64,000 bases of DNA, from assembly GCF_040938485.1 (NCBI RefSeq), contig NW_027271236.1, positions 1,984,001 through 2,048,000 on the forward strand. Direction: 5' to 3'. Shown here one piece after another: positions 195-58,519 of this stretch (positions are counted from its first letter, which is position 1; every line of letters begins with the position of its first letter). A program made the translations under genes and the position numbers. Below the pieces are notes generated by a model. That model was not told the origin of the DNA. It saw nothing but the letters and a program-made list of their open reading frames with translations, and searched no databases. Source of the stretch: Diadema antillarum. Lineage: Eukaryota.

Positions 195-3100
195 TTTAGT
201 CGTTTTGTGCTACCTAGGCCAAAGACGAGATTCAGAATGTATATAAGTGGTAAGGGCCATATCTGCAAATGAAAACAAAAGTTTTAATGCAGGAGAGGTA
301 GCAGCTAAACAAACCGAAGTGACCATTCTAGTCTAAACTATTGCACCCAATAGTTAAAGATTTTAACTTTATCTATCGCTTTTTATACAGTGTCATGTTA
401 CTTTAATAGCAAAAACTGACTTTACAAATGAAATTAAAGAAGAAAAAAAAAAAGAAAACTCTTACAATGCAGGCAGTCAATAATCAATACCAGTATTCAA
501 TGAATGACAACAAGTGGACCTTTGGGACAAAGCATCAGGCTACAGTAAAACACGATATTTTTGCGGCATGAAATCATCGCGAATTGCAGCCGACGGCCTT
601 TTTCGCGGCGTGAAATTTTCGCGAGTTGCCTCTAACATTCAATGCATATAGACAAGAACTTTCATGTGCATTTTAATTTCGCAAATCTTGGCTCTCGCGA
701 AATTCGCGAAATCAAAATACACGCGAACATTCCTCATTTTACAGTATCGAAAGAATCCCACAGTGTGAGCACCATACATTTTTTATTCATTGCAAAGCTA
801 CAGGCTGAGCTTATCATTGTGTTTACCAAGATATCCAATGATTGCAGAAGACACTGCAGGGCAAGGGAAAGAAAAAGACTTTTTTATTTATTTCTTTTTA
901 ATTAATTGCAAAAGTATTACAAGGAAATCTGTAGTACAGTTCATAACACTATGAATTAGAGTTACAGACATGAAAGCACATCAGAGAATTCAGTTCTTTT
1001 AATCTTATGAATGCTGTAAAAGTGGAAATTTTTGCGGTGTGGAAATTTTCGAGAATTTCACGCAACTAGAAACCAGAGCAAAAATAAAAGCACATGATTA
1101 TTTTTGCTTGCCATATGTTCCAGTAGTTGATGTCTTGATTCCACTGAATTAAAAACATACGAAAATCTTCTTACCGGGCCGAGAGCGTAAAATTAGTCAC
1201 ATAAAAATATCCACTTTTACAGTAGTTCCCTCAGGACTACATGATTGCTAACTTGTAAAGTATAAAATTTGGCAAAATCAGAAGTTATCTATTATGTTCA
1301 AAATCATAGGCAATCATAGGCAATGAATATTGTGGACACGGAGGGATACTATTGGCAATGCTGCACACTGGCACTGGTCTGACAGTCCCTGACCAGTAAA
1401 AATCACTGTCAGACCAGTAACTTTTTCAGGAATAGACCAGTAAAAGATGGAAAAGCTGGGTACATACTGGTTAGACAGACAGGTCGGACCAGTAGAAAAA
1501 ATGGGTTAGTATGCAGCCCTGCTATTGGTAAAAATTGTAACGTTTTATTCAGCTTTCAGTAAATACTTATTCTATGGTAGAATACAGCACAGGGCTGCCT
1601 CTTTCCAAAGACAGACAAACCACAAAAGCACACATATGACTGCTACAGACTTACCTTTCTAGGAATTTGCCAATTCCAGTCAGGAAAATGAACAATGCCC
1701 AGACTTTTTCCAAGAAAGAGTATGACTATCGTTGATACCATCTGTTGTCATAGATGAAAACAAGATTTCATTACGTTCAGCATTTTTACTATGTTGAAAG
1801 AATGGTAATAGGACAATAAAATGAAATATATCATCACCTGATGGAAATGAAAACACCCGGGACAATACTCCAGCAATAATAATTACACATTAAAAATTAA
1901 GCTTACCTCAGGGATAAAATCAGTTATAAGGAAAATATGGAACAGACTCCCATATTCTAGGTGATACCAGATAAAACAGGGCCTCACTATTCAGACCACT
2001 CTACACTTGTCATTACATCAGAAACTCCAAGTCCAGGCATCGCCCACATAAATCAAAAGGGTCATTGAAGCTGTGATAGAGTGATAGATGCTCTCACGTG
2101 CCATCTTACTAGCCATACTCTTGACCATACTAGTACTGACAAAACTGAAGTTGGACCAGCAAAAGCTAAATTTCAAGCGGGAGAAAATACATCTTAAGTG
2201 CGAGACACACAGCTATAGTGGAAGAATAGGGGGATGGGAGATTTTGTGAAAATGGCCCCAAAGCAGAAAATTGGAGTCTCCATTACATTATGGAAAAGGA
2301 AAAACTTAAACCACTAGCTTATATGTGGCTATCTGTTTACTTTGCATTTGTAATTTCAAAGTTCTGTGCATGAAAGGCATACAAGCACTTTTTTTCTCTC
2401 TTTCTCTTTCTTCTCCTTCCCTCTCATTGGTACTCACCTGACCGAGACCCACAACCTGATAGGATGGAAATCTGCAAAATTATCAGAAAAGAGAAAATTG
2501 CAAATAAAACGTAATACATAAATCAGAACTGACGAAAAGTGAAGCACACATCAACACTTTCTATAAACCAATGTACAATGTAGCTCAAATTCATTAGAAA
2601 GATCTGATGAGTGATATGTAGCCTATGTATATGATATCTACATACTGGAAAATATTTTAATTCTAAAAGCTAAATCAACATTTTCTATGATGTAACGAGA
2701 CTCAAATTTACATAAATGATTCGATATCACACTGAAATTGGGAGAGCATTACAAGACCATCGTCTTTCCAAGGGCCGGACAAGACAGGTGAATAACCAGG
2801 TAGAGGTAATACATAATAGATATTTTCTGTAAGTTTCATGCAGTTTGGGTTAAAAAACTAAATTTGAGATAGAATATCTATCAGCATGTGGATACAAAAC
2901 AACTGGACAGGGGGTGCCCTGATATTTTATTTCTTTTAACCTTTTCTTGTGGCCAAAAATTCCATCAAGTTGGATTTGAAGCTGTTGAGAGTCATACTTT
3001 CACCCATGCTTGAGGAAAGTTTGCTCCATTCATTTATGCTTCACTGTGAAAAAGAGCTACCTTGGTACAGTCTGAGCTTTGATCTGAGTAGTCCTGCTTT

Positions 3101-6100
3101 TTTATGCAATTGTAAATTCAATTCTCTATCGATGACTAAGGGTTCTGTATGTACTGTTGAGGTATTGTTTTTATCTTCCTTGGTGATGTTAGATAGCTCG
3201 TCAACCTCCAGCATGATCAACCCCCTGTCTTCCTTTAATATCTTCTCTGTTCTTTCTCTGTTGCTTTCATTCCTTTTTTCTCCTGTTTTTTGTCTGTTTT
3301 CTTCAAATGGTTCTACTCCTGACCACCTTAGTGTACCATGCCCAGTGCAGTATAGACCCCTATGCTGTCAAACAAGGAATGGTCGCGTGCATTTTAATTT
3401 TGCGAATTTCGTGAGAGCCATAATTCGCGAAATTAAAATGCATGTGAAAGTTCTTGTCTACACTATATGTATTGAATGTTTGAGGCAACTCGCGAAAATT
3501 TGATGCCGCGAAAAAGGCCGTCGGCTCCAATTCACGAAAATATCACGTTTTACAGTACGTCAGTACAGTCAGTAGGTCTACACGTTGTAATGTAGACGTA
3601 GACTCTAGTCACATTTTTTTCTGCGAATAAACCATAGTTCACTGGAGGAAGTCAACAAAAGAAGAAGAAATAACGTCAAGAAGGTAATGTAGGGCAATCA
3701 AAGAAGAAGTGTGATAAATTTACTGATAGATATTTATTACCGGGTACCCATACTGATTAAAGAGAAGGTAAACCCCAAGAGCAATGTGGATTGAGTGAAA
3801 GCAGCAGCATTAGTAGAACACATCAGTGAAAGTTTGAGGAAAATCGGACAATCGATGCAAAAGTTATGAATTTTTAAAGTTTTGATGTTGGAACCGCTGG
3901 ATGAGGAGACTACTAGAGGTTATGACGTATGAGTGGACAACAATACCAAGAAAATATAAAGAAAATTCTGCAAGAATCCATTTTTCATGAAAATTACAAA
4001 TTCCATCAACTTGATATTGACATATGTTAAGGGTAGCAATTATTCCCCCTGCTTTCTGAAAGCGGTTGGTCCATTGCTCTTTCATAATTCTAGAAAAGTG
4101 AATTTTTGTTGAATTTCCTTTATATTTTCTTTGTATTGTTGTCCACTCATACGTCATATCCTCTAGTAGTAGTCTCCTCATCCAGCGGTTCCAACACCAA
4201 AACTTTAAAAATTCATAACTTTTGCATCGATTGTCCGATTTTCCTCAAACTTTCACTGATTTGTTCTACTAATGCTGCTGCTTTCACTCAATCCACATTG
4301 TACTTTGGGTTTACCTTCCCTTTAAAAGTGATCCCCCATCTGTATCACCTCAGCTCATAGAACCTTAGACAGAAAGATCCGTCTGTCCGGAGGACTCTTT
4401 TTATATTTTGCCATTAACGCTGTCCTCCGTAGACAGACGGAAGGTTGCAGTACCCATTGCTGTGTGGATGTTCTTAACCACTGTCTCTATGGAAAATTGG
4501 GTGAGGTACCTCACCCTTCTCGATTGCGTCTAATTCACGGCCCTAGGTCGGCAAATTTAAGCTTGTATAGTGAAATTAGCTCTTTAAAAATACATTAAAC
4601 TCACCAGATTAATGAATAATCCAAGATTTTAGTAGAATTTTCAACGTAAAACACAGCCTGTCAGGTTGTCACGTTCAAACTGCAGAAACATACACTATGA
4701 ATCTATTAGCCAATCACATGCGAGGTACATGTAGTTTCTACGTGTTTGTTTTACTAAAACACGTACCTCGCATGTGATTGGCTTACAGATTCAAAATGGC
4801 GACTTACAGCTTGCGAACGGCGATGTTGTGATATCGATAAAATGTCTGCGTTATAACCGAGTTTATGTGAGTATTTCGATTGCACAATTGAGAAATTTAT
4901 CCCAAATATTGCTGCATAATGTGTCATGTCATGTCAAACTTGTTTGAATGTAAAAAAGCTGTCTGAAATTTGGTTTATCGTAACGTTTGATCTGTGCGCG
5001 ACTGCTCCACACAGGAGCCGCAATCATTGACTTCGGTCTGTATACGGAGGGGATCCGTGAAGCCAGACGCAGTCTCCGCGGAACATTCCCCGACGGACAG
5101 ATACAGACCGATCTTTCGGTCAAATAGAACCTATACTCTAACTATAGGCCTATCAGGCTCAAGTTCTAAGCTAAGTTATCTCAGTTCAGGAAACCCACTC
5201 ACAAGGGGGGCCTCTCCTTATAAGTAACCCGTCCCCCTTATAAGTAACCCCGTCCCCCTTATAAGTAACCCCCGGGGCACCCCTTATAAGGAGTCTCCAC
5301 GCTTTTTTGCAATGCAACGCGAAAATGAAAGGACTGCGGCAATTCGCTTGATTATGTCCATAAAGCTTCACAAGTTTCCTAGTTACTCACGAAATTTGAG
5401 CAAAATCGGTTCGAGGCATCATATCTAAAATCATGGATTTAAATGCGATGTCAAACGACCCATGCGAATGCTGAAATGCGAGCGATTACTGGCGTGAGTG
5501 TCGCCAGGCGCGGCGGCGCGGCAATGCTTGAGTGCAGACGTGGCGACCGAGTACGAAAGTCTCGTACTCAGTCGCCACGTCTGCACTCAAGCATTGCCGC
5601 GCCGCCGCGCCTGGCGACACTCACGCCAGTAATCGCTCGCATTTCAGCATTCGCATGGGTCGTTTGACATCGCATTTAAATCCATGATTTTAGATATGAT
5701 GCCTCGAACCGATTTTGCTCAAATTTCGTGAGTAACTAGGAAACTTGTGAAGCCTTATGGACATAATCAAGCGAATTGCCGCAGTCCTTTCATTCTCCCG
5801 TTGCATTGCAAAAAAGCGTGGAGACTCCTTATAAGGGGTGCCCCGGGGGTTACTTATAAGGGGGACGGGGTTACTTATAAGGGGGACGGGTTACTTATAA
5901 GGAGGGGCCCCCCTTGTGAGTGGGTTTCCCGAACTGATCTAACCATCATCAAGCGCAAAAATCATGTCCGCTCTTGCTGTGGCATCTCTATGGGCAAGAG
6001 ATGGCAGGTTGAAATGCTGTTGTGCCTGTAGTCTCTTCTCATAATTTGTACTGATTGAAAATAGAGAAGTAGAATGTACTAGAACCCTGGCGCTGGCCTA

Positions 6101-6465
6101 CATGTACCCTTCCAAATTCCCACGATCCGATCCCGCCCGATCGCGCGATCCCAGCCAGTTGGTTGGTATAACTCTTCGCAACACACCTTTTTAAACGTAT
6201 GGGACTAATCTCACACCCTATCGACGTGGCGTTTATTAGTCATCGTGTATTGACCTCAATATCAAATCAGTGATGTCACTACTTACTTGAAATTAGTCAA
6301 TACAGCTTTGTTGATGAAGACTATGAGTATGGAACTCAAGCTATAAAACAGAGCTGCAAGAAGTCGACTGAGTCTCGATGGAGCCGACGAATCGGTGGAC
6401 GCCGTCGTGCCTTCCCCTGCCATCGTTGGGTTGTTTGTTGTCTTTTCTTCTTCAGATTTTACCAT
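195..6465 (-). CDS. SLC35D2: SLC35D1/D2-family nucleotide-sugar transporter (fringe connection/sqv-7 type), 5' part; remaining exons lie beyond the window start
   Basis: Exons in transcription order: 6465-6287 (MVKSEEEK...RLLAALFYSLSSILIVFINKAVLTNFK), 2471-2438 (FPSYQVVGLGQ), 1741-1655 (MVSTIVILFLGKSLGIVHFPDWNWQIPRK), 262-195 (IWPLPLIYILNLVFGLGSTKRL). All introns are GT-AG with consistent phases. Peptides match recalled SLC35D N-terminal TM segments. ATG 6465 has ACCATGG context; a second in-frame ATG lies at 6423. D1 versus D2 orthology cannot be resolved. Confidence 0.93.
541..746. mobile_element. TA-flanked MITE family A (Tc1/mariner-type termini)
   Basis: Bounded by tacagtaaaa at the left end and ttttacagta at the right end; cgcga-rich core. 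Inverted copy at 3363-3557; degenerate copy at about 51580-51765. Confidence 0.7.
1012..1224. mobile_element. TA-flanked MITE family B
   Basis: TIR ctgtaaaagtgga...tccacttttacag + TA. Further copies at about 7480-7642 (partial) and 50056-50267. Confidence 0.78.
1357..1521. mobile_element. Degenerate CAG...CTG MITE (gttagtatgcagccctg right end)
   Basis: Right TIR intact, left degraded; repeated gaccagta motif; ctattgg on both flanks. Confidence 0.5.
2935..3360 (-). pseudogene. Decayed CR1/L2-type LINE ORF2 C-terminal fragment
   Basis: Minus-strand translation ...EKILKEDRGLIMLE...SKLRLYQGSSFSQ*SINEWSKLSSSMGESMTLNSFKSNL resembles the CR1-type tail (SF...INEWNxLP......LNSFKxxL) and has an internal stop. 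Confidence 0.6.
3363..3557. mobile_element. TA-flanked MITE family A, inverted copy
   Basis: Reverse complement of 541-746 (aagttcttgtcta, gaggcaactcgcgaaaatt, gccgcgaaaaaggccgtcggct). Confidence 0.72.
3761..4321. mobile_element. TTAA-flanked MITE with long (about 200 bp) TIRs, Kolobok-like
   Basis: TTAA at 3757-3760 and 4322-4325; purine-purine 5' terminus; long inverted arms (gtaaacccc...ggatgaggagactactagagg versus its reverse complement). Confidence 0.82.
4366..5123. mobile_element. Non-autonomous DNA transposon with 9-bp TSD (Mutator/MULE-like)
   Basis: Imperfect TIRs TAGACAGAAAGATCCGTCTG / TTGACCGAAAGATCGGTCTG (right end, reverse complement); direct repeat ATAGAACCT at 4357-4365 and 5124-5132. 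Confidence 0.7.
5182..5936. mobile_element. Foldback-type non-autonomous DNA element, copy 1 (755 bp near-perfect palindrome)
   Basis: Arms 5182-5556 and 5562-5936 are reverse complements with a 5-nt loop (aagtc). Termini CAGTTC...GAACTG; 4-bp direct repeat ATCT at 5178-5181 and 5937-5940. Lies in SLC35D intron 1. Confidence 0.93.
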
Positions 6466-6713
6466 GGTGCGTGTATATGTGTGGTACACTTGCACTGTAC
6501 ATGTACATACAGCGCGGTGGTGGTGGTGCTGGTGCAATGGTAGACGTGGGTACGGGTGGAGCTAGCTAGCTAGCCAGCTAGCGCTGCGCCGGGGCTCGGC
6601 TCGCGTCGGGCGGCGGACCGTGGAATCCGTGGACATGCAGAGCTAATACATGCACAGTAAATTACTGTAGTACGCGCGCGACGTGAATTGAACGAAAATC
6701 AACGTCTGTCACC
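6466..6713. promoter_or_regulatory. Compact CpG-rich bidirectional promoter/5' UTR region shared by SLC35D and Asterix
   Basis: Only 248 bp separate two divergent ATGs. The interval is GC/CpG-rich against an AT-rich background (e.g. gcgctgcgccggggctcggctcgcgtcgggcggcgg, tacgcgcgcgacgtg). Confidence 0.75.
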
Positions 6714-9700
6714 ATGTCGACTACTACTTCAGCTCCAAATTCATCCGATGGAGTCAAAAGGCCCAACAAAATTAAAAAGTAAGTGTATCAGCTGTAAAAT
6801 CTAAGGCTTCAAAACTCAGTATTCGGTGAATAAAAGTTCTTAGTTGTACGTGTTTTTTTATCTGGACCGAGTGATTCAGTGATTCACGCTTCGCGCTTTT
6901 TACTTTGTGTAGATAAGTCCCATACATGCAATCTCATGTAACCTACCACTGCCTTGAATTGCATTGCCATTAGCATTGGCATCATTGGGAAGCTTAAATA
7001 CGTACATTGCATTCATATGCATGCACGTTCAGGTTGGTATGTCAGGCAGAGAGCTGAATAGCATACAACTCACTGTATTTAGTATTAAATCAATAAACTC
7101 ATTGAACTTGATGGATGTGACTGCTGTGAGGATTGAGAGATTAGTATGGTAGCCCTACTACTCTAGCTACATATCGACCACCTTAAACCGACCGCGTATA
7201 ATTCGCGCACTGAACACTTAGTACGCACTTCTCTGCGTGCAAAGCACATAAAAATGGATTGGCGTTGAATGTAGATGAGGATGGTGTGGGAAAACGTGAT
7301 AATTCACTGTTCATTAATGGTTTTAATCAAGGACAAAATTTCGAATGAATATTTTCACCGAATCGTAATGACAGCACAATGTAATGTCTATGGAAGTTTC
7401 TAAGTTCGTCGGCGATATTTTTGCACTGAAACTTCAAATCGAAAAGGGAACAACGGCATTTGATAGAGCTGGATTCAGAAGCTAGCGCGAAAATAAAAGC
7501 ACGCAATCATTTTTGCGTGTCATATGTTCCAGTACTCTCAGTAGCTGATGACTTGATTCCTCGGAATTAAGAACATGCGAAACTCTTCTTACCTGGCCAA
7601 GCACGAAAAATTAGTCGTGCGAAAATATCCACTTTTACAGTATTTAGCCTTGTAGTTCCACTCTGGGAGCTCTGCCTCTGACTGGGGCTATCCTGGGTTT
7701 TAGGCCTACTACTAGGGGGCTAGCCCGACTAGACACCATGCGAAGCACGGCATCCCTGTGTTGCAACACTTGTGTACAGCGACAGGGCTGTGTATAGTTA
7801 CGAGGGGGCTCCTAAAACTAACCCTAACCCTATTTAAAGCCTAAAGCCACCTACATGGTGTAAAGTCATGTCTAAATGTAATCATATAATCTACTTTGAT
7901 ACATATCACATTTCTTTTTTTCAATTTTAGCGGGTTAAATTACATATGGCGAATTGCAATGTGTGTTCTAACACATCATGTCACAGTTTTTTTTTCTTTT
8001 TTTTTATCGTCAATTTGTGTGTTTCACTGTCTAGTTCTTCCAAAACTGCTTTTGGCAGGCTTTTTGCTGTGTGCAATTTCGTGCTTCTGGCCACAACTGA
8101 GAAAACATGATGTAGATGGAAGAGAGAAGAATAAACTGTATCTCTTTTTCTCTCTCCCTCTCTCTCTTTAATCTCATCAAGAAACCAGCAATCTCCCTCG
8201 GCTTATCTTTTCTTGTCAAACTTAAATTTGTTCACAGGATGTGTTTTATCATTGTTATTGAGTATAATACTGAGTTACACAACTGGAAAGACTTCCTCAT
8301 GCCCCCACCCCCCTAATTTTGCCATATCACTCAGCACTACCCCACCCTTGTTAGCTAAATGCACAGATGCACGCACGCAGGCACATTTGGCAAGTGGTAG
8401 GGACAGTATGCATCCATGCGTAAGCTGACAAGGGTAGGGTAGTACAGAGTCTAATGGCAAAATAAGGGGGGGGGGGCATAAAGAAGTCTTTCCATACAAA
8501 TTTCCAGTAAATGCTCACATTTCACATGACTGACTAGATTCTTTTGACCTGCTCTCAAGTTATATATGCCCCTGGCTTATATTAACAAATCATTTCTCTT
8601 GTTGTGTTGTGTGTGACAGATACACGCCACCAGATGAAAATTCCCCTGATGATCCCACTGCAGACTACATGAACCTCCTTGGTATGGTGTTTAGCATGTT
8701 TGGACTCATGATGAAGGTTTGTAATCAGTTCATGATTTATAAACATTCATAGGTAGTGTAAAATCCTGTAGCTCTCTTTTGCATCTCCTTGCAATTTAGG
8801 TATTTAAATTGTGCACACAATAACATTCAACAGGTATTGGCATCAAATTTTAGAGATATACAAATTGTTTTCCCCCTCTATTTTTCTTCCAGAAGTGCAG
8901 TATTGTTGCATAGATGCAGCAAATTTGTAAAACTTTAATGTAGATTTGTTGTGACAGAGCAATAAAAGCAACCAAAACTCAATTTATTTTTTCTATGAAA
9001 GTACCATGAATAAGAAATAATGCTTGCATGATATTAAGACATAAATGATACCACTGATACTTTCAAATTTTGTAACTCATTGTTTTTAAAACCACTGGGA
9101 TTAAAAATTATGTCTGATTTTCTTCAACATGTAAAAAACAACAACAACAAATTATATAGATCACAATTGTTGCTATGTATTGGCAATTGTATATTGGTAT
9201 ATTGTGAATGTATGTACACATGCAAATACAGGTTGTATACACGCTGTTGAGGGGATTTGTTCCATGCATTTTAAGCATGAAGTCATCAATGTCATGATAT
9301 TCATCGATTAAAATATGTGCACCTGCAAATGAAACAATTAAAAAAATACTGTGTTGCACAGCATTATTTGTAAAAATGTTTTGATACATTGTATCACTCA
9401 GAAAAATATGAAGAAACAATAAAGCTTGCCAAATTAATTTCTAACAGAAAGAATATTTTTAACTATCCCTGTGCTGTTTCATTTCTAATTTCTCAGATGA
9501 AGTGGTGTGCATGGATGGCAGTCTTTTGCTCTTTCATCAGCTTTGCCAATTCAAGATGTAATGAGGATGGAAAACAGATGTTTAGTAGCTTCATGTAAGT
9601 CAAATCTTCTTGATAATTTATCCTTCTTAATTAATTGAGCAAAACCTGATAAGTAGAGTCTGTTCATGTTCACCTACAGTGTACATGAACATAGCAGTTG

Positions 9701-10980
9701 TCAGTCATTAGGTAAGTTTGGAGTGAGATTTTTCTGAGTCTTGTGGAGAGTGTGTTCAGAAACAAATCACATAATGCACTTCTAATGTAAAGTTTGTCAT
9801 GCAATGACCACTAGAACATGGCATGTAACACATCTTGCTTGTTGATTGGAAGGTGGCTTCTTGTGATAGGTCAGTCTAAGTTTCATTTCAGCAAGCTACA
9901 ACTTGTACTTCAATGTATTAATTGTACACTGTTTTATTATTGCATCTAAATCTGCTGCACATCCAGTTGTGATGTGTGCATGTTTGCTACTAGTTGTAGC
10001 CTGAGCAGTCACTAATTAACCATTCAAAAGTTCAGGTGCCTTGATTTGTTGGCATTCCCTGTAAAAGTAACTTAGTATTTTCTGTGAAATGACTTAACGA
10101 AATTGACTCTACATGATGTGTGTGACACAATAAAACTATATTCACTCTTAAAGGGGATGGCTAGTAACTGATCAGTGGGAATCAGTGGGAATTCCGGGGG
10201 ATGATTGTTCCAATCCTTGTGGGATTCATTTAAGAGTACATTATGTATCTATTGTTGTGTGAAAACTATTTGCTTCAGAATGGTCTCATATTCAAGTAAT
10301 GTGCAGTTTAATGCTTCCAGGTTAGCGTGCCTGTACAGTGACGGGGCATTACACTGCACATTACTTGAATATGAGACTGTTCTGAAGCAAATAATTTTCA
10401 CACAACAATAAATATATAATGTACTCTTTTAGAATGAATCCCACAAAAATTGGAACAATCATCCCCCAGCATTCCCACTGATTCCCAGTGATCAGTTACT
10501 AGCCATCCCCTTTAAACTTTGAAAGGTTAGCTTCATTAAGACCCCACAGAGCCAGTGTCAAAGTACATGAGCTTGGGTATAAAGTAAAATATCGGAGAGA
10601 TATAGATACTATCAATGTTTGTTAAAGGTGAAACTTTTAGAGAGTTTGCCAAGTATATTTCCCTATGAAGGAGGTAGTGCTAGTGATGTGAGCTCTGATT
10701 TGCATAGTCTTTAACTTGTGACATACACATGTATATCAATATGATTTTTGTTTTCTTGAGTGGGATGTGAATACCAAAATTTTCTGAACAGAATTTGAAA
10801 TGAAGCATTTTCTGAATGTTTATGTTTATGTCTTCTGTTTTAGTTTGTTTTTGCAAAGAGTATTGTCACAGTAATAAGTTATTCAAACCTTCTGGTCTTT
10901 TACATTACAGGTTGTCAATATCAGCCGTAGTGATGTCATACCTTCAGAACCCAGCTCCAATGACGTTACCATGGCAATGA
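6714..10980 (+). CDS. WDR83OS: PAT complex subunit Asterix, complete, 109 aa
   Basis: Exons 6714-6778, 8620-8716, 9497-9594, 10911-10980 (330 nt, GT-AG, phases consistent). Translation [109 protein letters not shown] matches recalled Asterix motifs ([35 protein letters not shown]). Confidence 0.97.
10152..10511. mobile_element. TTAA-flanked MITE, Kolobok-like, in Asterix intron 3
   Basis: TTAA|AGGGGATGGCTAGTAACTGATC ... GATCAGTTACTAGCCATCCCCT|TTAA; TIR about 85 bp. Confidence 0.85.
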
Positions 10981-11159
10981 CAGCGGGAGACAGAAGTGTT
11001 ATAGATTGCTTTTTCCAGCCTTTTCTCTGTATTTTGAATCTTGCTCTATTACATGTGTTTCATGTTATATCCCCTGTACTACACCCATACATCTTATTAA
11101 AAAAAAAAGAAGATATGTTCATAGGTACTGTACTGTCTAATGTTAAACTATCATTTGCA

Positions 11160-11523
11160 TGCTGAAAAAAAAATCGCCCGATTTCCCAATACACATATAG
11201 TAGCCTTTGTTACAGATTTGTACGTCGTTAAACCCTCAGCACCGCAGGGCGCCTCACCCTGGCAGAAACTAGAGCACATGCAAAAATGCACAGCTTGAAC
11301 TCCCAAGTTCATTGACCCTACCTGCCAAAATATTGAAAATCCTTTTAAAATCCATACAAATTTTCGGATCACTACCAAAATTTAATCATCTCTTCCTTGT
11401 GTCATTCTCAACCTTTCCTGCAAGTTTCATCCAAATCCGGTCATAACTTGTTGAGTTATTTTGCACATGGACAAACAAACCAACGGTAATGAAAACCTAA
11501 CCTCCTCCCGTAGCGGAGGTAAA
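11160..11523. mobile_element. Possible Helitron/Helentron-type non-autonomous element
   Basis: Ends in aaaacctaACCTCCtcccgtagcGGAGGTaaa, a short subterminal hairpin. Classification is from recalled pattern only. Confidence 0.4.
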
Positions 11524-13582
11524 TATCAGTACCCGAATAGGCATTGGTGCACTTATGGATAGCATTGGTGTAAATTTGGATAAATGACATCTCGCAAAAA
11601 TATCTGTGTCCTCCATATAGGCAAAAATATGTTTACATGAAAATAACAGGTTTTTACAGTAAGTGCAACCTATCATAGAATAGGTCACATGTAATCTGGA
11701 CAGTTTCACCTTCATTGATGTGCACTTTGTGAATGCATCCAATTGATTTATTGTCTATACTGTATGATTGTGATATAATAGCTGTGATTATTGAAGATTG
11801 ATTTTGGCAATGAACTTTGTGTAATAATAAGTAAAATTTTCTTTATCTGAGTTTTAGAATGGATTAGTTATTCATTTTGGGTCATTCCATCTTTAACATG
11901 TCAGTCAATTGTTTATGGATTTGATCAGTGAACAGATCCACAAGAAACTCTTTGGTTATCATTTGTAGAATGGCTTTCGGTATCAATATGTAGTACACAC
12001 AGTATCTTGTCCGGAAGGTCAAGCAATCAAATTTCTTGTCTGCTTCCAAAGAAAGATCCTCACATCTCTTGCATTCATGAGTAGCATTTGATTTTTGAGA
12101 CATGGAGGATGTACATGAAAGAGTGTACATGTAAATGTAGTTATTGCAGAATGCAGTTAATATCTACTCCATGTTACAAGAAAACAATTGTAAGAATCTT
12201 ACTTTTTGCTCTGTAAAAGACGATGGAAAACATGTGCATCTGTATATGGCAAGGAGAATTTAGATCGCTCCTGTATGCAATAAATATCTCTCAAATGGCA
12301 TTATGAGTTTCACAGTGATTGTAGTGTTGTCATGAGAAATAGCTACTGGTATGTTGTATAGCAGGTTCAAAAAATAAAGTGATATTACAAATATGTTCTT
12401 GGTGTTCTACAAATACATTACATTTGATTATGGTGTCAAGGAAAAGAAGTGATATCGAGTGATGGGGGGGGGGGGGGGGGAGTGATATCTGACATACATA
12501 CATTAATCAGGCTTTCTCCCATTGTTGATATATGCATTTGTTACAGGAAAAAAAAAAGTTCTTCCACTGGGTCTAAGAACAGCAATACATAACAGATGGA
12601 CCTGAACAGACATACTATCAACCATGCATTATTTACGTACCCATTTTCTCATCAAGGTATACATTCAAAGAGACATTCAACATATACAGTCAACTTCAGC
12701 CAAGTCAAATAAAAAAGACCAGAGATAGCCCTTCAATTTGCATGACTCGACTTTCGCAATAAAGTAAACAAATGTTGGTACAATGTAACTCCCATGTGTA
12801 GATTGTTTCTTTGACTTGCCCAGTTTTCTGACTTCAGTCAGGTTGACATAGGCGAGGTTTCTCAATAATAACTGTATGTGAATATATGTGGTTGTACATG
12901 TATGTGTGTGTGTGTATGTGTGTCTGTGTGTGGGTGTGTATGTGTTTGATGTTGTGGTGCCCTCTTCTTGAGTTTGCCATTGCATTACTAATGGAGTCAA
13001 ACTAAGTGGTTACTTGCTAGCATTGATCAATAATGGGTGGGAAAGCGGAAAATACACCAGCGTATATTTCAACACATGGGACCTGTGATAGTTCAGGTGA
13101 TGAAATACTGTATCAGTAACAGTAGGCAACATCCTATACCATACAAGTGTGAACCGAATAAATTTCTTCAAGTTTTGAATTTATGGCGACAGTTCATGAT
13201 TTTTTATCTCATTTCAGCAAAAAAAAACACCAAAAAAAAAAACAACAAACAAACAAAACAGTGACAACAACACAATGCTGCATAAATCATCTTTCCCTTC
13301 TGACTTTCCTCAAAAATAAGATATTTCAAAGAAATGATACAAATCACTTGTTGGCTTTCTTCATTTGCATAGATCCAATAGAAGAGGAAGCAGAGTTTCT
13401 TGATATGCTATACAATTTGTAGAATATTTTTGTTTCACTTCACCATGACGATATATTTCAGTGATAGGCCTGACCCATCTTAAAGGTGAACTCCTGTGCT
13501 ACTCCTTCAGTTGCAGATGTCTGTATATTTGTCAGTGGCGGATAAGGGGGGGGGGGCACCAGATTCTTGCCCCCTTCTCTCT

Positions 13583-13618
<36 letters not shown>

Positions 13619-14149
13619 CTTGTTAGCCAATGAAACCAGGAAGTGGCACCAGAAACAAACAAAGAAACAAAACTTACACAGGAGCATTTTTTTTTTTTTT
13701 TTTGCATGTCAGCTGATTGAACCCGGAAGTGGCACCAAAAAGAATTTTTTACGAAAGTCCTTGATCCTCCCCTGTTTGAATATAATGTATATGCGAGTGA
13801 TCATAATCCTATATATGGTGATGATGATGAGGGAAAAGCACTCCATGAACCCAAATACTCAAAATGAAGTGAAACTTTTCCCCAGTGTTTTTATTCAGCA
13901 TTTTCATTTTTTTTTTAATCCTAGTGAAGTATCCACTTTTTGGTGTAATTCTTACTGTTTGGCTGGCGAACTGAAGTGTATAATAATATGGTACGTTACA
14001 GTTTTAATAGTAATCCTAATGATAATTACAGTCTGTTCTGAACCTATGATCACATTAAAAACTGTCAGCTGTAGTTTCGCGGTTGTCATCAGGTATGGAA
14101 TGTGAAGACTATGATCTGTATGAAAGGGGTCAAAGTTCACATTTGACCA

Positions 14150-14560
14150 TAACACAGAGGTCGAGCATCTGGCTGGCTGGGTGTTGTTACGTTATCCGGT
14201 GTGCGGCACGGTGTATCCGAGGAGTAGGTAGGTTCGTATACTGTACCGTACCCGTGGCCGTACCCACATCGCATACAACACCGCACCGGTTGCTGCTGCT
14301 GACAAAAGAAAATCCCCGAATCATGATTGCGGTTGGTCCAGAATGTTCGCTGGGGAAGTGATTTGAGTCTGCTGTGTGGGATTCAAGATTCGAAAGCTGA
14401 TATTAATTGTATGAAAGAGGACGAGTTGATTCGGTATTCCCCACCTGCCTGGGAAGTTCAGTTCTGACTGAGTCTGTCGTTGGCAAAGAAAGGATACAGC
14501 GTAGCCTAGCCAGCCTGTCTGCTGTAGCGCGGTGTGTGTAGGTAGGTATGTAACACCATT
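14150..14560 (+). promoter_or_regulatory. CpG-rich region; candidate UBE3C promoter and non-coding first exon
   Basis: Local CpG enrichment and a donor-like gtag|gtaggtatgt near 14550. The UBE3C ATG exon is preceded by a pyrimidine tract and acceptor (tttttacttgtag near 17452). No transcript evidence. Confidence 0.45.
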
Positions 14561-14805
14561 TTCCTCCTCGCTCGCTGGCTGCCGATCGTCTACGAACTGT
14601 AAATAATAACGCCGTAAATCACTGGTAAAACTGGCTAAAACCATAATGTTAATGGAACAGTAACACTTGCGCCCAATGAATGGTGTCCATAAATACGGAC
14701 TTAATATTGGGCAAAATGTTAGTACGAAACGAAACATATCATAGGAATAGGATAAGGACATTTTCACATCAAGTTGACTTTTACTGAGTCGATCAGCATG
14801 ATCAG

Positions 14806-14950
14806 TTGACCGACAAGTCTGTCTAATTCCGCGAAAAACTTCTCATTTATAATGAATGACATTTTCTGGGTCAGTTTTAAAAACTGACCCAGCAAATGTC
14901 ATTATTATAAATGAGAAGTTTTTGCGGAATTAGATAGACTTGTCGGTCAA
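14806..14950. mobile_element. 145-bp hairpin MITE with 9-bp TSD (MULE-like)
   Basis: Palindromic along its length, centred on ttttaaaaa. Termini TTGACCGA...TCGGTCAA; direct repeat CATGATCAG at 14797-14805 and 14951-14959. Confidence 0.82.
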
Positions 14951-15536
14951 CATGATCAGTAAAGTTTTAAAAGGTTCACTCGGCTACTGCTAACTTACAA
15001 ATTAAATTTATGAGTTTAGAGGCTACATCTGTTTACATAACATTGGTAAATTTTAAATTTCTTCAGGAGAGGTTGCCTTTGTCATGTTCACTCTGATCTT
15101 TGGGTTTGCTGATCTAAATAGAGATCTACAATTAATGTAACGTTAGGGCGTACTCTGTAGTGGGGTCTATTGACTATAGCGTTTATCAGTTTGCATCCAT
15201 GGAGAGGCAAGTGCTTAGATGTTGAATTAGATTAGCCATACTAGTGTCATTTTAATTAAATATTACTGGCAATACTTGATACTGCTCACCGCTCATGCAT
15301 GTCCTAAATAAATGACAGGACAGGTGTAACCCAAAGAATTTGACCTGCAACTAATCAATGCAATCATTCCTGAAATCACACGTACTTGTCATTGACAATT
15401 CAATTTATAGCAAGCCGCCCATAATTTGACCATACAATGTAGCTCCATCCAAAGTTTGATCGCCAGCTGCATGTAAAGTAGGTGTCTAACACATCGACAG
15501 TGTACACAGTACATTGAAACGGACACCCATCTATTT

Positions 15537-16626
15537 CAGTTCGGGAAACCCACTCACAAGGGGGGCCCCTCCTTATAAGTAACCCGTCCCCCGTATAAGT
15601 AACCCCGTCCCCCTTATAAGTAACCCCAGGGGCACCCCTTATAAGGAGTCTCCACGCTTTTTTGCAATGCAACGCGAAAATGAAAGGACTGCGGCAATTC
15701 GCTTGATTATGTCCATAAAGCTTCACAAGTTTCCTAGTTACTCACGAAATTTGTCTAATTTGTCATATCTAAAATCATGGATTTAAATGCGATGTCAAAC
15801 GACCCATGCGAATGCTGAAATGCGAGCGATTACTGGCGTGAGTGTCGCCAGGCGCGGCGGCGCGGCAATGCTTGAGTGCAGACGTGGCGACTGAGTACGG
15901 AGACTTTCGTTCATTCAGGTGGCTTTAAATGAAGGAAAAATAACAAAAGTAACGAAGTAGTCAACCACCTACCTTTGCAATTGGTATGCATATATACAAA
16001 AGGATACGTTCCCATAGGGTTGTCCAGTTGAAGTCGTCCCTAAACAAAAATTTTAAGTTGAAACTTGCAAGTTTCGCCGATGAAGCTTGAAATTTCCAAC
16101 AGCTCCCGCATTCAGCAAGTTGTTCAGCGCAGCTCGCTGGAACATATCCTTTTGTATATATGCATACCAATTGCGAAGGTAGGTGGTTGACTATTTCGTT
16201 ACTTTTGTTATTTTTCCTTCATTTAAAGCCACCTGAATGAACGAAAGTCTCCGTACTCAGTCGCCACGTCTGCACTCAAGCATTGCCGCGCCGCCGCGCC
16301 TGGCGACACTCACGCCAGTAATCGCTCGCATTTCAGCATTCGCATGGGTCGTTTGACATCGCATTTAAATCCATGATTTTAGATATGATGCCTCGAACCG
16401 ATTTTGCTCAAATTTCGTGAGTAACTAGGAAACTTGTGAAGCTTTATGGACATAATCAAGCGAATTGCCGCAGTCCTTTCATTTTCGCGTTGCATTGCAA
16501 AAAAAGCGTGGAGACTCCTTATAAGGGGTGCCCCGGGGGTTACTTATAAGGGGGACGGGGTTACTTATACGGGGGACGGGTTACTTATAAGGAGGGGCCC
16601 CCCTTGTGAGTGGGTTTCCCGAACTG
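15537..16626. mobile_element. Foldback-type element, copy 2 (1090 bp; arms about 476/488 bp, 126-bp unique spacer)
   Basis: Same termini and arms as copy 1, plus a further inverted segment of about 120 bp. Spacer 16013-16138. 4-bp direct repeat ATTT at 15533-15536 and 16627-16630. Confidence 0.93.
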
Positions 16627-17505
16627 ATTTATAGCATTGCACGTAAAGAACAAGCTTTCACGCATGAGACTACCCGCAATGGTTTTGCATTCTTCACTCG
16701 AGATTTGATGATGCCGAAATACTGAAAAACCTGATAATAAACAAGATCAACAGCAAAACAATGACACCGTACATTATGGATGCACATTCATTGGAAAAGC
16801 ATTACATGCATTTCACACGTATTGTCAATAGAGGGTAGGGGTGTTGGTTTCAAAACTACAGCACAACTGAGTGTGTTACAGTTTAAGATATTAACCCACA
16901 TGTTCGAAGCCTGAGTTACCTTGTATCGCAAATCACATTTTTAATGCGCTCTTGTGAATTCAGAGTATTTTCTTTACTTGTGAGTAAAATTTTAGGCAAA
17001 ATGTGAGATATTTCAAATATCTGTTGATAGAAGAAACATTAGGGTGTCGAGGTGTTGGACACCCAACTATACCTGGTACAATTGTAGTTCCTCCTATGCT
17101 CTTGCGTGCTGTCGAATTTCGTCACAGGAGGTCAAACTTCGCTGGATTTGGTGCAGGTTTTTTAGTGATTCAAATCTTTACAAGATCATTGAGTTGCTGA
17201 AAAGGTAGACCCTACAGTCTAGATCCTACATGCTTTCATTTGTGTGCCTTAACCATCATGTGCATTTAATAAAGAAATGTACAGCAAGAGCAACAAGTTA
17301 TACCTTCTCAATATTTTCAGCATTTTGTACATAATTTGTCATATGAAGAGAGAAAATTGTATGTGACATCGTGTTTCAGGATGTGATTGTTATGTAGAAA
17401 TACCTAAATTCAAAGTTTTGAAATATCGTTAATTTTATTTTTTACTTGTAGGCCTAAACAGTGTAGAGACTTCATCGTTCCAGCAGCCACAGAGGAGGAG
17501 CCACC

Positions 17506-20500
17506 ATGTATAGTTTTGACGGTGACTTTCGGAGGAGACCGGTGGTGTCATTGAGAGGAGCCAGCAAGAAGGTTAGCCCCTGTCAAATCACTGCTATCAG
17601 CTAGTCCTACTGGACATTTTCATTGTCATGCTGCCATGCAGGAAGTGCCTGCAGTAGTCTGATGGTAGCTTTCTGCTGAATTAAACCTTGCTCACACCAA
17701 GCCAGAATACAGTACAACCTCCAGAAGCTGTGTTTTGTCTACCCTTGTCCACTATTTTATCCATGAACTGTTAAAAATACCTACCTCTGTAACAGTAATC
17801 CCTTCAGGGTAGTTGCGAAGTCACCATCATTATCTAGGTCTGTCTTCTGAACTCTCTCCTATTTATCATCTCGTCATTTATATTATTCTATGATTTTACT
17901 TTATAATGTGATACACATCTTTACTTTGCTTTTGGTTTGATAGGTAATTCAATATTATGAAGTGTTTGTCTTAAATTACAGTTGTACCCCTTAAAATGTG
18001 TACAATGTATTATTTCCATACACTTGGCAAAGTAAATTGATAAACGATATGATACCTTTAATATACATAATGCTTTTCCTTGCACCACATCTAGAGATTT
18101 TCTTATATTTGGGAAGCTTTTATCTTATATCCTCATGACATGGTGCATGCCTGTTGCTGAGCAGGGAGTGCAAAGTTTGCTGCCTAGCATTGATACTTGC
18201 AGTAACATCAGGAGAATGGCGTAACGATTAAATGCGAGCGAGCGGGGCGAGCGAGCTTGAAAATTTTGACATTTTACAGTCCAAAATCTGCCGTTTGTAG
18301 CTATATTTTTTCGCTTTGGAAATTGAGGAGGTGGGGGCACATCGGGCACAAATGCTGGCAATTACTGGCAGCAACATCAGGAGAATGGCATAACGATTAA
18401 ATACGAGCAAGCGGATCGAGTGAACTTGAAAATTTTGACATTTTACAGTCCAAAAACTGCCGTTTGTAGCTATGTATTTTCGCTTTGGATATTATGGGGG
18501 GGGGGGTTCACCGCGCGCAGCTGCTCGCAATTAATGGTAGCAACATCAGGAGAATGGCATAAAGATTAAATGCGAGCAAGTGAAGCGAGCGAGCTTGAAA
18601 ATTGTGACATTTTACAGTCCTCAAACTGCCGTTCGTAGCTAAATTTTTCGCTTTGGAAATTAAGAGGGGGGGGGGGGGTGCCCGGTGCGCCTCCCCCCAC
18701 CCCCCGGATCCGCCAATGGTAGTCAAGGGTGTCGGTTTATGTTCATGATTGGGGGAGGTATGACCAGCAAGGGGGCGTTGAAGTGACCAAGCAGGGGAAG
18801 GATGTCCAAAATCTGCACTTTAGAGCATCCCCTAATCGATTGTGTTTGTGTGTGTGTTTTTGTGTGTGTTTTATATTCATTGAAAAATTAGGAAATAGCC
18901 CAGGTCAAGTCTTATCATTGGCAATGCAAGGCATTTTAATATAGACTAGTATGTAAAGCAACACTGCAAAATAAATGATCTAGCTTTGATATAACGAAGC
19001 GTATTCCAAGGTCACAAAGGTGTACATTCTACATCACATTACGCAACATTGCAGCGACTCTTTTTGCCGTTCGGATGTTCTCATTACACTGCGCATATCC
19101 TGCTTATATTCAGAATGCCAACCAGGAATCACGCTGAATCACAATCTTTTGAACAATGTTTCACACTATATACCTCTTTAATTATGGTCAAAAGAAATCT
19201 TAGAAAAATATCTTATTTCTTGATCACCCTTTCATGTCAATTTCAAAAGCAGTTTACTAACCCTTGAATTACCATTTTGGTAAGTTGTTGTTGTTTTTTA
19301 CCAGCGGATTGCCCCCCCCCTGTAGTTAATAATACTAAACATTAATTATATGATATGGGGGCATGTGCCCCCCTGTAGTTAACAATACTAAACATTAATT
19401 ATACGATATGGGGGCACGTGCTCCCCATGCCCCCCCCCCCCCCCCCCCCCCCCCCGTAGTTAACAATACTAAACATTAATTATATGATATGAACTGTGCT
19501 CCTCAGTGAAGTATATCAAATGAATTCCTTTGTGCTTTTAAATTATGCAAGTTAGAATTACATTCAGATGATGAATCTGATCTTCCTGTGTTGAAAGCTG
19601 TATGAGTGACATACATATTGCATTGTTGTGTGTGTTTTCCCCCAATAGGAGGCGACTGCATCTCTGTTACAAAGAAATCAAGAAGAGAGACGGAAGAGAG
19701 AAGTAAGTTGTGCAATAAAAGGTATATAAAAGTGCTTTCAATACAGATGTTGCCTAGATTCTGGTAATTAAAAGTGGTATATTGATTTTTATTATTGGCT
19801 GATGCCCTTGTGTCATCTGTGCAATCATTTGCTGAAGCATTTACAGTATAAATGCATGATCTCTACTTTCTGTGGACAGTCATTTTGTGTAGGTTTTTTT
19901 TTAGTGGCATGTTTTCATTTATTTTATGAAGTGTATTGTCAAAAGATCCTATATTGGGGGGTAAAACATTCATGTAGTCCAGAAAACAGTGACTTGACTG
20001 TTTGTTTGTTTTATGTTTGTGTTTGTTTGTTTGTTTTATTTATACAATACCTTGTACCAGTACACTGTATTGAAAGTTTGAAGTCATTACTTGCAGTTTT
20101 GATGGACTGAATTCTGTTCAGTTATGATTGACTGAAAAAATATAGCTGACTCAACAGAGCAATTTGGAACATGATATAACAATGCAATGCTATTTTGATT
20201 TATGATGTATCAAAAGGGAAATACAGCATGTATGATTAGTTTTTTTTCGGTTGCATTTTTGTTTGTTTATTTGCAGGCAGAAAGAAACCGCCTGAGAAGT
20301 GCCACAAAGATACAGTCATTTGTGCGGGGCTCCCTCTGTAGACACAAGCTAAAGAGAAGCCACCGACGGGAGTGGGATGAGAGAGTTGCAGCTGCGGCCA
20401 GAGAGCTGGTCGATGTGCAGACAATGTCCAGTCTGCAGAGATTATTGATTCACTTCTACAACTCCACAGAAGATATGCAGAGACTGGTATGGGCACAAGA

Positions 20501-42383: not shown

Positions 42384-42692
42384 CAAGGCAACGTAATTTT
42401 CAATTCAAGAGTTTCACAAGCTTTGCAGCAGTCTGTTGTTTGGCCACTGTTGTACTCTTCTGCTTCATGAGACTGTGACTTTGTGTGATGTGATCGTACT
42501 TTACTGTTATGTTTGTCTGTTTGTGTGTGAATGCCTGTGTACATTTTGTGTGTTAATGCATGTGTGTGTGTGTGTGTGTGCACTTGTACATGTTTCAATC
42601 AGGCACCAACATTGCAGCAGTGGGGAAGTTCGTAATGAATTCACTGTTCGACACGAATTGAGAACAGAGTACATGTACTTTCCTTGACTTAA

Positions 42693-43059
42693 AGGGATGG
42701 TATAGTAATGGTGGCGAAGAGGATTGGGCTTTTAACTTTTTGCGAGATACCAAGAAGCCACTTATGAAATAGGACAGAGCATACTGTTCTAAGAGGAATT
42801 CAGAGTTTATTTGATGAAAATCGGTTTTGGAATGGCTGAGACATCAAAAAACAAAGAAAAACAATGCGACCGTGATAAAAGATGGGTCCCACCATTTATC
42901 AGGATTGCTCTATTTTTATCTTCACAAAATGAACAGTAAATTCCTCTTGGAATTACATTTTCTTTCCTATTTCAGAAGAGGTTTCTCGTTATCTCACCAA
43001 AAGAAAAAAAAAATGTTAGAAACGTGAAAGTAGGTCTAAACAGAAACTATATGATCCCT
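42693..43059. mobile_element. TTAA/Kolobok-like family copy
   Basis: TTAA at both ends; family core sequence. Confidence 0.8.
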
Positions 43060-58501: not shown

Positions 58502-58519
58502 TTATTAAATTCATGGTCA

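What the first reader, a model, noticed from the sequence alone, without database searches (positions are those of the whole stretch)
5178..16630. Foldback family with CAG...CTG termini, 4-bp TSDs and a shared T-ATYT-A target
Seen: both copies have identical termini and 4-bp direct repeats (ATCT, ATTT). Both reconstructed empty sites read T-ATYT-A (TATCTA, TATTTA). The copies are about 10 kb apart and highly similar, which suggests recent, possibly local, transposition. Known: 4-bp TSDs occur in piggyBac/Kolobok (TTAA), Ginger, Chapaev and Sola (AWWT preference); sea-urchin TU foldback elements have similar modular arms but were described with longer TSDs. Inference: a possibly uncatalogued foldback family mobilised by a Sola-like or unknown transposase.
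Basis: partly seen in the sequence, partly recalled or inferred. Interest (0 to 1): 0.72.

Follow-up and report, generated by a model that had tools for sequence, protein, structure and literature searches.

The report
Young foldback MITE family, 4-bp TSD
The two near-palindromic inserts are copies of a very young, roughly 900-copy, enzyme-less jumping-DNA family of a sea urchin that always duplicates 4 bases at a Y-ANNT-R target; it is an ordinary kind of element, and the enzyme that moves it was not found.

Summary
Copy 1 (5182-5936, 755 bp, 375-bp arms, 5-nt loop) is flanked by ATCT. Copy 2 (15537-16626, 1090 bp) is flanked by ATTT.

Family A:
- The 25-nt terminus occurs 868 times forward and 879 times reverse in the 1.75-Gb assembly, and 0 times in the control.
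- Of 36 distinct two-ended copies, 35 have a perfect 4-bp duplication.
- A natural filled/empty contig pair shows a precise insertion at AACA.
- Copies lie a median 0.56% from their consensus and carry no ORF.

Family B is an older foldback family (81-92% identity, over 1,000 first-look candidates). It shares only the terminal ~25 nt and the layout of boxes spaced about 20 bp apart.

No transposase-bearing partner was found. A 10.25-kb copy and a 2.2-kb family-B element are nested insertions.

A 4-bp TSD with an A..T preference matches what is published for Sola1 and Sola2. It excludes piggyBac/Kolobok, Chapaev3, hAT and classical 8-10-bp foldbacks. The Sola link remains an inference.

The two window copies share no private variant, so direct local descent is unsupported.

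The scan met this family before on other DNA (s1-215089). Repbase and Dfam could not be consulted.

The parts
5178..5181 (.). Copy 1, left target-site duplicate ATCT
   Evidence: Read directly. It is identical to 5937-5940.
5182..5936 (.). Copy 1, family A foldback element, 755 bp, short type
   Evidence: It is the 100% query of the genome search.
5182..5206 (+). Copy 1, terminal ~25 nt (functional TIR core). It has one private G>A at position 7.
   Evidence: Only these ~25 nt are conserved between families A and B. The substitution was seen in 1 of 51 arms.
5217..5290 (+). Copy 1, left arm: four CTTATAAG boxes spaced 20, 21 and 25 bp apart
5557..5561 (.). Copy 1, 5-nt loop between the arms (arms 5182-5556 and 5562-5936)
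5828..5901 (-). Copy 1, right arm: four CTTATAAG boxes
5937..5940 (.). Copy 1, right target-site duplicate ATCT
15533..15536 (.). Copy 2, left target-site duplicate ATTT
15537..16626 (.). Copy 2, family A foldback element, 1090 bp, long type
   Evidence: Length 1090 appears.
15572..15645 (+). Copy 2, left arm box region: three CTTATAAG boxes plus one box mutated to CGTATAAG
   Evidence: The mutated box is mirrored in the right arm, and the same variant occurs in 6 of 51 arms.
15754..15762 (.). Copy 2, left arm: a 9-nt replacement where the right arm (16389-16408) and copy 1 keep the 20-nt family sequence
15900..16251 (.). Copy 2, inner palindromic module (15900-16012 and 16139-16251) around a 126-nt unique centre (16013-16138). 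Copy 1 lacks it.
   Evidence: The module is found only in other short, ORF-less copies.
16518..16591 (-). Copy 2, right arm box region
16627..16630 (.). Copy 2, right target-site duplicate ATTT

Best explanation
The two inserts are independent insertions of one very young, non-autonomous, cut-and-paste DNA transposon family ('family A'). It is a foldback or palindromic MITE of 0.5-1.15 kb that encodes nothing.

A transposase supplied in trans most likely works as follows:
- It recognises the ~25-nt terminus CAGTTCGGGAAACCCACTCAC.. and probably the four subterminal CTTATAAG boxes, which sit about two helical turns apart.
- It excises the element.
- It reinserts the element at a palindromic Y-ANNT-R site, with cuts staggered by 4 nt. 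Repair of those cuts gives the 4-bp duplication.

Shown here: the family, its size and youth, the fixed 4-bp TSD, the target consensus, a real filled/empty pair, the lack of coding capacity, and a second, older family with the same terminus.

Inferred: trans-mobilisation, the boxes as binding sites, and the superfamily. The TSD length and A..T preference point to a Sola-type DDD transposase. I put that sub-claim at about 0.4-0.5. The confidence given below is for the rest of the statement.
For: Family size:
- The terminus occurs 868 times forward and 879 times reverse, against 0 and 0 in the control.
- Of the first 100 hits listed, 42 form two-ended pairs and 16 are single.

TSD and target:
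- 35 of 36 distinct two-ended copies have perfect 4-bp TSDs. None extends to 5 bp.
- Non-consensus TSDs (ATCC, AACG, TAAT, TGAT and others) are duplicated exactly. This excludes a 2-bp TSD with conserved flanks.
- The target logo is Y-ANNT-R.
- Filled/empty pair: contig C2157 reads ..GTG AACA[element]AACA GGG.., and contig C36 reads ..GTG AACA GGG.. in flanks 99% identical.

Age:
- Median divergence from the consensus is 0.56%. Median identity between copies is 98.9%.

No coding capacity:
- The longest copies are nested insertions. The 10.25-kb C29 copy has TSD ATTC and holds an unrelated ~8-kb repeat.

Related family:
- Family B has termini CAGTCCGGGAAACCCGCTCAC.., TSDs AATT and ATAT, and arms of about 720 bp at 81-92% identity. 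It shares only the terminal ~25 nt and a box architecture of CTCAYGAG in place of CTTATAAG.

Literature:
- AWWT or AWDT 4-bp TSDs are described as 'a hallmark of the Sola1 transposons' (PMC3845634).
- Sola2 has AT-rich 4-bp TSDs such as AWWT (PMC3627910).
- Sola TIRs range from 11 to 1124 bp and have very variable termini (PMC10741241).
Against: - No autonomous element was found. Three searches required the terminus but a different continuation. They returned 5, 17 and 18 hits. Those hits were mainly deletion derivatives, single ends and family-B-like termini. Nine sites were read out, and none carried a transposase-sized ORF.
- The central TSD positions are looser than AWWT. Position 2 is A or T in 29 of 35 sites and position 3 in 22 of 35.
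- The one Sola1 TIR I could read in the literature starts GGACC, not CAG. Sola termini are variable, though.
- Only the first 100 of 1,747 terminus hits could be listed. A few long copies could therefore have been missed.
Confidence: 0.88

Rival explanations
1. It is the same kind of non-autonomous foldback element, but it is mobilised by a transposase that is not Sola. Candidates are another superfamily with short TSDs (Academ at 3-4 bp, Ginger at 4-5 bp, Chapaev/CMC) or a lineage not yet described. The source could be a gene without the family's TIRs.
For: No Sola-type or any other autonomous partner shares the terminus. The central TSD positions are less AT-restricted than AWWT. CAG termini are not what the one readable Sola1 TIR shows (PMC3845634).
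Against: - Chapaev3 has a 3-bp TWA TSD and CAC termini (PMC3014272).
- Kolobok and piggyBac are TTAA-specific (PMC9587614), and 0 of 35 TSDs here are TTAA.
- Other agents' unchecked notes describe the Academ families of this genome with a 3-bp TAG or 9-bp TSD.
- Ginger termini are TGT..ACA, from my own memory.
- The A..T preference at the outer TSD positions is published for Sola1 and Sola2.
Confidence: 0.4
2. One window copy arose from the other by local hopping.
For: - The copies lie 10.3 kb apart, while mean spacing is about one locus per 1.75-2 Mb.
- Two of about 50 fetched loci hold a second independent copy within 0.4-2.6 kb (C1290 and C1815). About 0.1 would be expected.
- Family A copies were found nested in two family-B elements.
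Against: - The two copies are different structural types, 755 and 1090 bp.
- They share no non-consensus site.
- Copy 2 has a marker (T>G in box 2) in both arms that copy 1 lacks.
- The family tree is star-like, so kinship cannot be resolved.
- Four to five pairs within 10 kb are expected by chance genome-wide.
- In the first 58 listed loci, 1 pair lies within 10 kb (0.33 expected) and 4 lie within 60 kb (about 2 expected).
Confidence: 0.08
3. It is not a mobile element. It is a palindromic duplication or an assembly artefact.
For: Long perfect palindromes are sometimes produced by assemblers.
Against: - About 1,750 termini lie on hundreds of contigs, each copy with its own 4-bp duplication.
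- There is a filled/empty pair.
- Short-read contigs of four independent runs from two organisms hold the sequence at high depth.
Confidence: 0.01

Closest known systems
Sola superfamily non-autonomous elements (for example Sola1_NA MITEs of insects; Sola2 DFa/PPa elements)
   Same: Both have a 4-bp TSD with A at the first position and T at the last (AWWT or AWDT in the literature; ANNT here, with ATAT the commonest). Both include ORF-less derivatives with high copy number. Long TIRs are on record for Sola.
   Different: No Sola transposase was linked to this family. The termini start CAG rather than GGACC. The central TSD positions are looser. The element is an almost complete palindrome.
Classical foldback elements (Drosophila FB, sea-urchin TU, Tetris; mostly Mutator-related; Galileo is P-related)
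   Same: Both have very long inverted arms with modular subterminal repeats. Both have little or no unique centre and no ORF. Both vary in length through central deletions.
   Different: Those make 7-10-bp TSDs (PMC4079207). This family makes 4 bp in 35 of 36 copies, so a different transposase class is implied. Other agents' notes report foldback families with 8-9-bp TSDs in this same genome.
piggyBac / Kolobok
   Same: Both have a 4-bp TSD.
   Different: Those are TTAA-specific. Here 0 of 35 TSDs are TTAA. Kolobok termini are RR..YY (PMC9587614), whereas these are CAG..CTG.
hAT elements
   Same: Both have CAG-type termini and subterminal short repeats.
   Different: hAT makes 8-bp TSDs (from my own knowledge). 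That is not met here.
Family B of the same genome (termini CAGTCCGGGAAACCCGCTCAC..)
   Same: The terminal ~25 nt agree at 19 of the first 21 positions. Both have 4-bp TSDs, a foldback build and palindromic 8-mer boxes about 20 bp apart.
   Different: The rest of the sequence is unrelated. Family B has longer arms (about 720 bp) and is much older (81-92% identity). Its box is CTCAYGAG instead of CTTATAAG.

Membership tests
Sola superfamily | 4-bp target-site duplication | tested here: met
   35 of 36 copies have a perfect 4-bp TSD and none extends to 5 bp. The filled/empty pair agrees.
Sola superfamily | AT-rich A..T target (AWWT or AWDT for Sola1; AWWT for Sola2) | tested here: inconclusive
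   Position 1 is A in 32 of 35 sites and position 4 is T in 30 of 35. Position 2 is A or T in 29 of 35 and position 3 in only 22 of 35. ATAT is the commonest TSD, with 6 cases. Literature: PMC3845634, PMC3627910.
Sola superfamily | A Sola-type DDD transposase encoded by an autonomous relative with the same termini | tested here: inconclusive
   No ORF-bearing element with the terminus was found. No Sola protein or profile was available as a query, and only 100 of 1,747 terminus hits could be listed.
Classical foldback (FB/TU, Mutator-related) | Long modular inverted arms, no coding capacity | tested here: met
Classical foldback (FB/TU, Mutator-related) | 8-10-bp TSD | tested here: not met
   The TSD is 4 bp. 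For reference, Tetris and other foldbacks have 8-10 bp (PMC4079207).
piggyBac / Kolobok | TTAA-specific TSD | tested here: not met
   0 of 35 TSDs are TTAA. Reference: PMC9587614.
Chapaev (CMC) | TIRs beginning CAC; 3-bp TWA TSD in Chapaev3 | tested here: not met
   The termini are CAG..CTG and the TSD is 4 bp. Reference: PMC3014272.
hAT | 8-bp TSD | tested here: not met
   The TSD is 4 bp. The 8-bp figure comes from my own knowledge.
MITE / non-autonomous TIR transposon (structural class) | Short, ORF-less, homogeneous, high copy number, TIRs plus TSD | tested here: met
   Lengths are 486-1148 bp, there are about 1,750 termini, and median divergence from the consensus is 0.56%.

The most novel reading that the evidence does not exclude
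The A/B foldback lineage kept the same ~25-nt terminus and 4-bp Y-ANNT-R integration through at least two amplification waves. One wave is about 10-19% diverged and the other about 1%. No TIR-bearing autonomous copy is present in the assembly. The lineage may therefore be driven by a transposase that is not a conventional member of its own family. That could be a single-locus, host-resident Sola-like gene (another agent's unchecked note reports one in this genome) or an undescribed transposase class.
Probability: 0.12. Interest if true: 0.7.

Novelty: new member of a known kind. Interest (0 to 1): 0.3.

Why it matters
For annotation, about 900-1,000 near-identical palindromic inserts, plus over 1,000 older relatives, are a source of assembly breaks, hairpin RNAs and intron polymorphism in this sea urchin.

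For transposon biology, the family shows that the foldback build has arisen outside the Mutator and P lineages, in a lineage that duplicates 4 bp. It also gives a clean in-genome data set: a target logo, a conserved 25-nt end and co-varying box motifs in two families. These can be used to identify and test the responsible transposase.

It does not change any general view. Foldback MITEs, 4-bp TSDs and missing autonomous partners are all familiar.

Tried and rejected
1. Long copies as autonomous candidates.
- Seven one-ended or long loci (L031-L037) share nothing beyond the 375-bp arm.
- The 10.25-kb C29 copy is a foldback with a nested ~8-kb unrelated repeat. That repeat itself carries a 1.24-kb insert.
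- The 2.2-kb C2157 element is family B with a nested family A copy.

2. 'Terminus but different interior' patterns.
- These gave 5, 17 and 18 hits.
- I fetched one site (a chance match in ordinary sequence) and five. The three family-B loci came from the follow-up pattern search. None carried a transposase-sized ORF.
- Nine further sites were not fetched.

3. The inner module and centre of copy 2 as a probe. It hit only short copies.

4. A family B arm as a probe. All hits were abutting arms with no long interior.

5. A lead from note s1-224646, a Sola-like family marked by a 13-mer.
- The 13-mer is abundant: 1184 forward and 1189 reverse hits.
- The one longer cluster I fetched has no ORF. 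This gave no route to a Sola query.

6. Metagenome contigs with the 20-nt terminus. The eight hits are all high-GC bacterial chance matches.

7. Reads.
- Only short Logan contigs were available, and the left flank is itself repetitive.
- No joint spans the insertion site, so nothing can be said on polymorphism of copy 1.
- The runs do show the family at high depth in two coded organisms.

8. A search with window 3000-19000.
- A related stretch on C258, at 87-96% identity, aligns up to window 4363 and again from exactly 5937. About 35 bases lie between the two alignments.
- This is consistent with an empty site for copy 1 and for the neighbouring 759-bp repeat.

9. ORFs of at least 130 aa in the window. 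None is a transposase.

10. Bao et al. 2009, the Sola paper, is not held. Its content is cited through PMC3845634, PMC3627910 and PMC10741241.
Full report
**What is there**

The repeat finder and direct reading confirm two near-palindromic inserts.
- Copy 1 is 5182-5936, 755 bp. Its arms are 375 nt and about 98% complementary, with a 5-nt loop. As single-stranded DNA it folds into one hairpin of -502 kcal/mol, against -105 +/- 8 for shuffles. It is flanked by ATCT on both sides (5178-5181 and 5937-5940).
- Copy 2 is 15537-16626, 1090 bp. It has the same arms plus an inner palindromic module (15900-16012 and 16139-16251) around a 126-nt unique centre. It is flanked by ATTT (15533-15536 and 16627-16630).
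- Each arm begins CAGTTCGGGAAACCCACTCAC. It then carries four CTTATAAG boxes spaced 20, 21 and 25 bp apart.
- All 14 CTTATAAG boxes in the 64-kb window lie in these two elements, where 1.2 are expected.
- Copy 1 has a private G>A at position 7 of its left end, so the termini are nearly but not strictly identical.

**The family**

The window lies in a 1.75-Gb assembly. Other agents' unchecked notes name it the sea urchin Diadema antillarum.
- A 375-nt arm finds dozens of copies at 98-99% identity.
- The 25-nt terminus, allowing up to 2 mismatches, occurs 868 times forward and 879 times reverse. The reversed control occurs 0 times.
- Among the first 100 hits listed, 42 are two-ended pairs and 16 are single ends. 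This suggests roughly 900-1,000 loci.
- From all fetched loci I collected 36 distinct two-ended copies, mostly 486-1148 bp long, plus one of 3188 bp.
- Of these, 35 have a perfect 4-bp duplication and one matches at 3 of 4. None extends to 5 bp.
- Non-consensus duplicates such as ATCC, AACG, TAAT and TGAT are repeated exactly. The duplication is therefore 4 bp, not 2 bp between conserved flanks.
- The site logo is palindromic, Y-ANNT-R. A is at TSD position 1 in 32 of 35 sites and T at position 4 in 30 of 35. Position -1 is a pyrimidine in 27 of 35 and position +1 a purine in 30 of 35.
- ATAT is the commonest TSD, with 6 cases, and TTAA never occurs.
- Contigs C2157 and C36 are 99% identical in their flanks. 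One has a family A copy between two AACA and the other has a single AACA. This is a natural filled/empty pair.

**Age and kinship**
- For 51 well-aligned arms, median divergence from the consensus is 0.56%.
- Median identity between copies is 98.9%, and between the two arms of one copy 99.2%.
- The burst is therefore very recent and the tree is star-like.
- The two window copies share no non-consensus site.
- Copy 2 has a T>G in its second box in both arms, a variant seen in 6 of 51 arms. Copy 1 lacks it.
- There is thus no sign that one window copy gave rise to the other.
- Some clustering at the kilobase scale exists. Two of about 50 fetched loci hold a second independent copy within 0.4-2.6 kb, and family A copies sit inside two family-B elements.
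- In the first 58 listed loci, however, neighbour distances are close to random: 1 pair within 10 kb where 0.33 is expected.

**A second, older family**

I searched for sequences that keep the terminus but change afterwards. This uncovered family B.
- Its termini read CAGTCCGGGAAACCCGCTCACGAGG.
- Its TSDs are AATT and ATAT, with a few decayed.
- It is a foldback with arms of about 720 bp at 81-92% identity, and it gave 1,154 first-look candidates.
- Families A and B align only over the first ~25-30 nt.
- After that, both have palindromic 8-mers about 20 bp apart in G+C-rich spacers: CTCAYGAG in B and CTTATAAG in A.
- A conserved end together with co-varying boxes is what one expects if the same or a closely related transposase serves both families. 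This is an inference.

**The search for the enzyme**

No copy has coding capacity.
- Seven long or one-ended loci share only the arm.
- The 10.25-kb copy on C29 (TSD ATTC) holds a nested ~8-kb unrelated repeat. That repeat is inserted in a CTTATAAG box with a TAA duplication.
- Three searches with IUPAC 'not' codes returned 5, 17 and 18 hits. These were mostly deletion derivatives and single ends. The 17 hits also included the family-B-like termini that led to family B.
- The nine sites I read from these searches and the follow-up were short elements, lone ends or a chance match.
- No Sola protein or profile was available as a query. A lead through another agent's 13-mer family gave no ORF.
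- Metagenome contigs gave only bacterial chance hits.
A rare long copy cannot therefore be excluded.

**Reads**

Four public runs were laid on window 4700-6400 as short contigs only.
- The family is present at high depth in two coded organisms.
- The unique right flank is fully covered only in organism A.
- No contig bridges the insertion site, so polymorphism of copy 1 is undecided.
- A related stretch on C258 aligns up to window 4363 and again from exactly 5937, with about 35 bases between the two alignments. This is as expected for a site lacking copy 1 and the adjacent 759-bp repeat. I could not read it.

**Comparison with known kinds**
- TSD length is set by the transposase. Four base pairs excludes the Mutator- and P-related foldbacks, which have 7-10 bp (PMC4079207). 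It also excludes hAT at 8 bp, a figure from my own knowledge.
- The absence of TTAA excludes piggyBac and Kolobok (PMC9587614).
- Chapaev3 has a 3-bp TWA TSD and CAC ends (PMC3014272).
- A 4-bp TSD with A first and T last is published as a hallmark of Sola1 (AWWT or AWDT; PMC3845634). It is also reported for Sola2 (PMC3627910).
- Sola TIRs range from 11 to 1124 bp and have very variable termini (PMC10741241).
- Other agents' unchecked notes report young Sola1 elements in this genome.

I therefore take a Sola-type transposase as the most likely driver, at about 0.4-0.5. I do not file the family as Sola, because the defining feature, the transposase, was not found.

**Verdict**

This is a real, well-defined, very young foldback MITE family with a strict 4-bp TSD and a Y-ANNT-R target, and it has an older sister family. 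It is a new member of a known kind, so it is of annotation value rather than a surprise. The same family was already followed up elsewhere in this scan (s1-215089). Whether it is in Repbase or Dfam could not be checked.

Noticed in passing
L061:61-2290 (C2157), L062:57-1444 (C102), L063:49-1556 (C36), L065 (C1240): Family B is an older foldback family at 81-92% identity with 1,154 first-look candidates. Its termini read CAGTCCGGGAAACCCGCTCAC, it has CTCAYGAG boxes, and its TSDs are 4 bp (AATT, ATAT).
   Followed up: partly
L061:1450-2168 versus L063 (reverse strand) around 1427-1435: A natural filled/empty pair. A family A copy sits between two AACA on contig C2157, and a single AACA is present on contig C36. 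The flanks are 99% identical, so these are probably two haplotypes or a very recent duplication.
   Followed up: yes
L058:221 to L059:4221 (C29:1009720-1019221): An unrelated repeat of about 9.5 kb is nested in a family A arm. It is inserted in a CTTATAAG box with a TAA duplication, and its ends read AGGGCCGTTCACATTGG. It has 30 or more copies at 92-100% identity elsewhere (for example C968:392599-400736) and looks PIF/Harbinger-like by TSD and ends. It carries its own nested 1.24-kb element with inverted ends of about 55 nt.
   Followed up: partly
L064 (C152:450700-456740), reverse strand 129-878: A family A copy (TSD ATCA) is inserted about 95 nt inside a family-B-type element. Together with L061 this makes two family A copies inside family B elements among the few family B loci read. 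It may reflect a preference for related elements, but the evidence is anecdotal.
   Followed up: no
window 4365-5123: A 759-bp repeat with many copies at 98% identity in the genome lies 58 bp upstream of copy 1. Both it and copy 1 appear to be absent from a related stretch at C258:849492-851841 (87-96% identity).
   Followed up: partly
window 3757-4325, 10148-10515, 14805-14951, 8284-8494: These are further small palindromic or inverted-repeat elements, with arms of 33-159 nt at 85-96% complementarity. The region is a nest of MITE-like inserts.
   Followed up: no
window 29251-29602, 36673-37027, 42688-42892, 49284-49654, 55835-55956, 58136-58504: A dispersed repeat of 150-350 bp is present in both orientations at 61-91% identity. 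It is an older interspersed family.
   Followed up: no
window 18194-18700 and 36072-36480: Two tandem arrays: three 169-bp units, and a lattice with a period of about 49 bp.
   Followed up: no
window 37363-37824 (+): An open frame with a strong HECT ubiquitin-ligase domain match (E = 1.5e-34). It is probably an exon of a host gene.
   Followed up: no
window 4700-6400 in runs X3 and X15 (organism B): Runs of a second coded organism hold the family at high depth. They hold only the first ~130 bases of the unique right flank, which suggests the family is shared by a related species or lineage.
   Followed up: no
G000 genome-wide; L069 (C9:2389400-2395400): The 13-mer GGTAACGTATCTG occurs 1184 times forward and 1189 times reverse, against 19 and 17 in the control. 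The hits fall in clusters of 2-3.7 kb, which agrees with the array family of another agent's note. The cluster I fetched has no ORF.
   Followed up: partly
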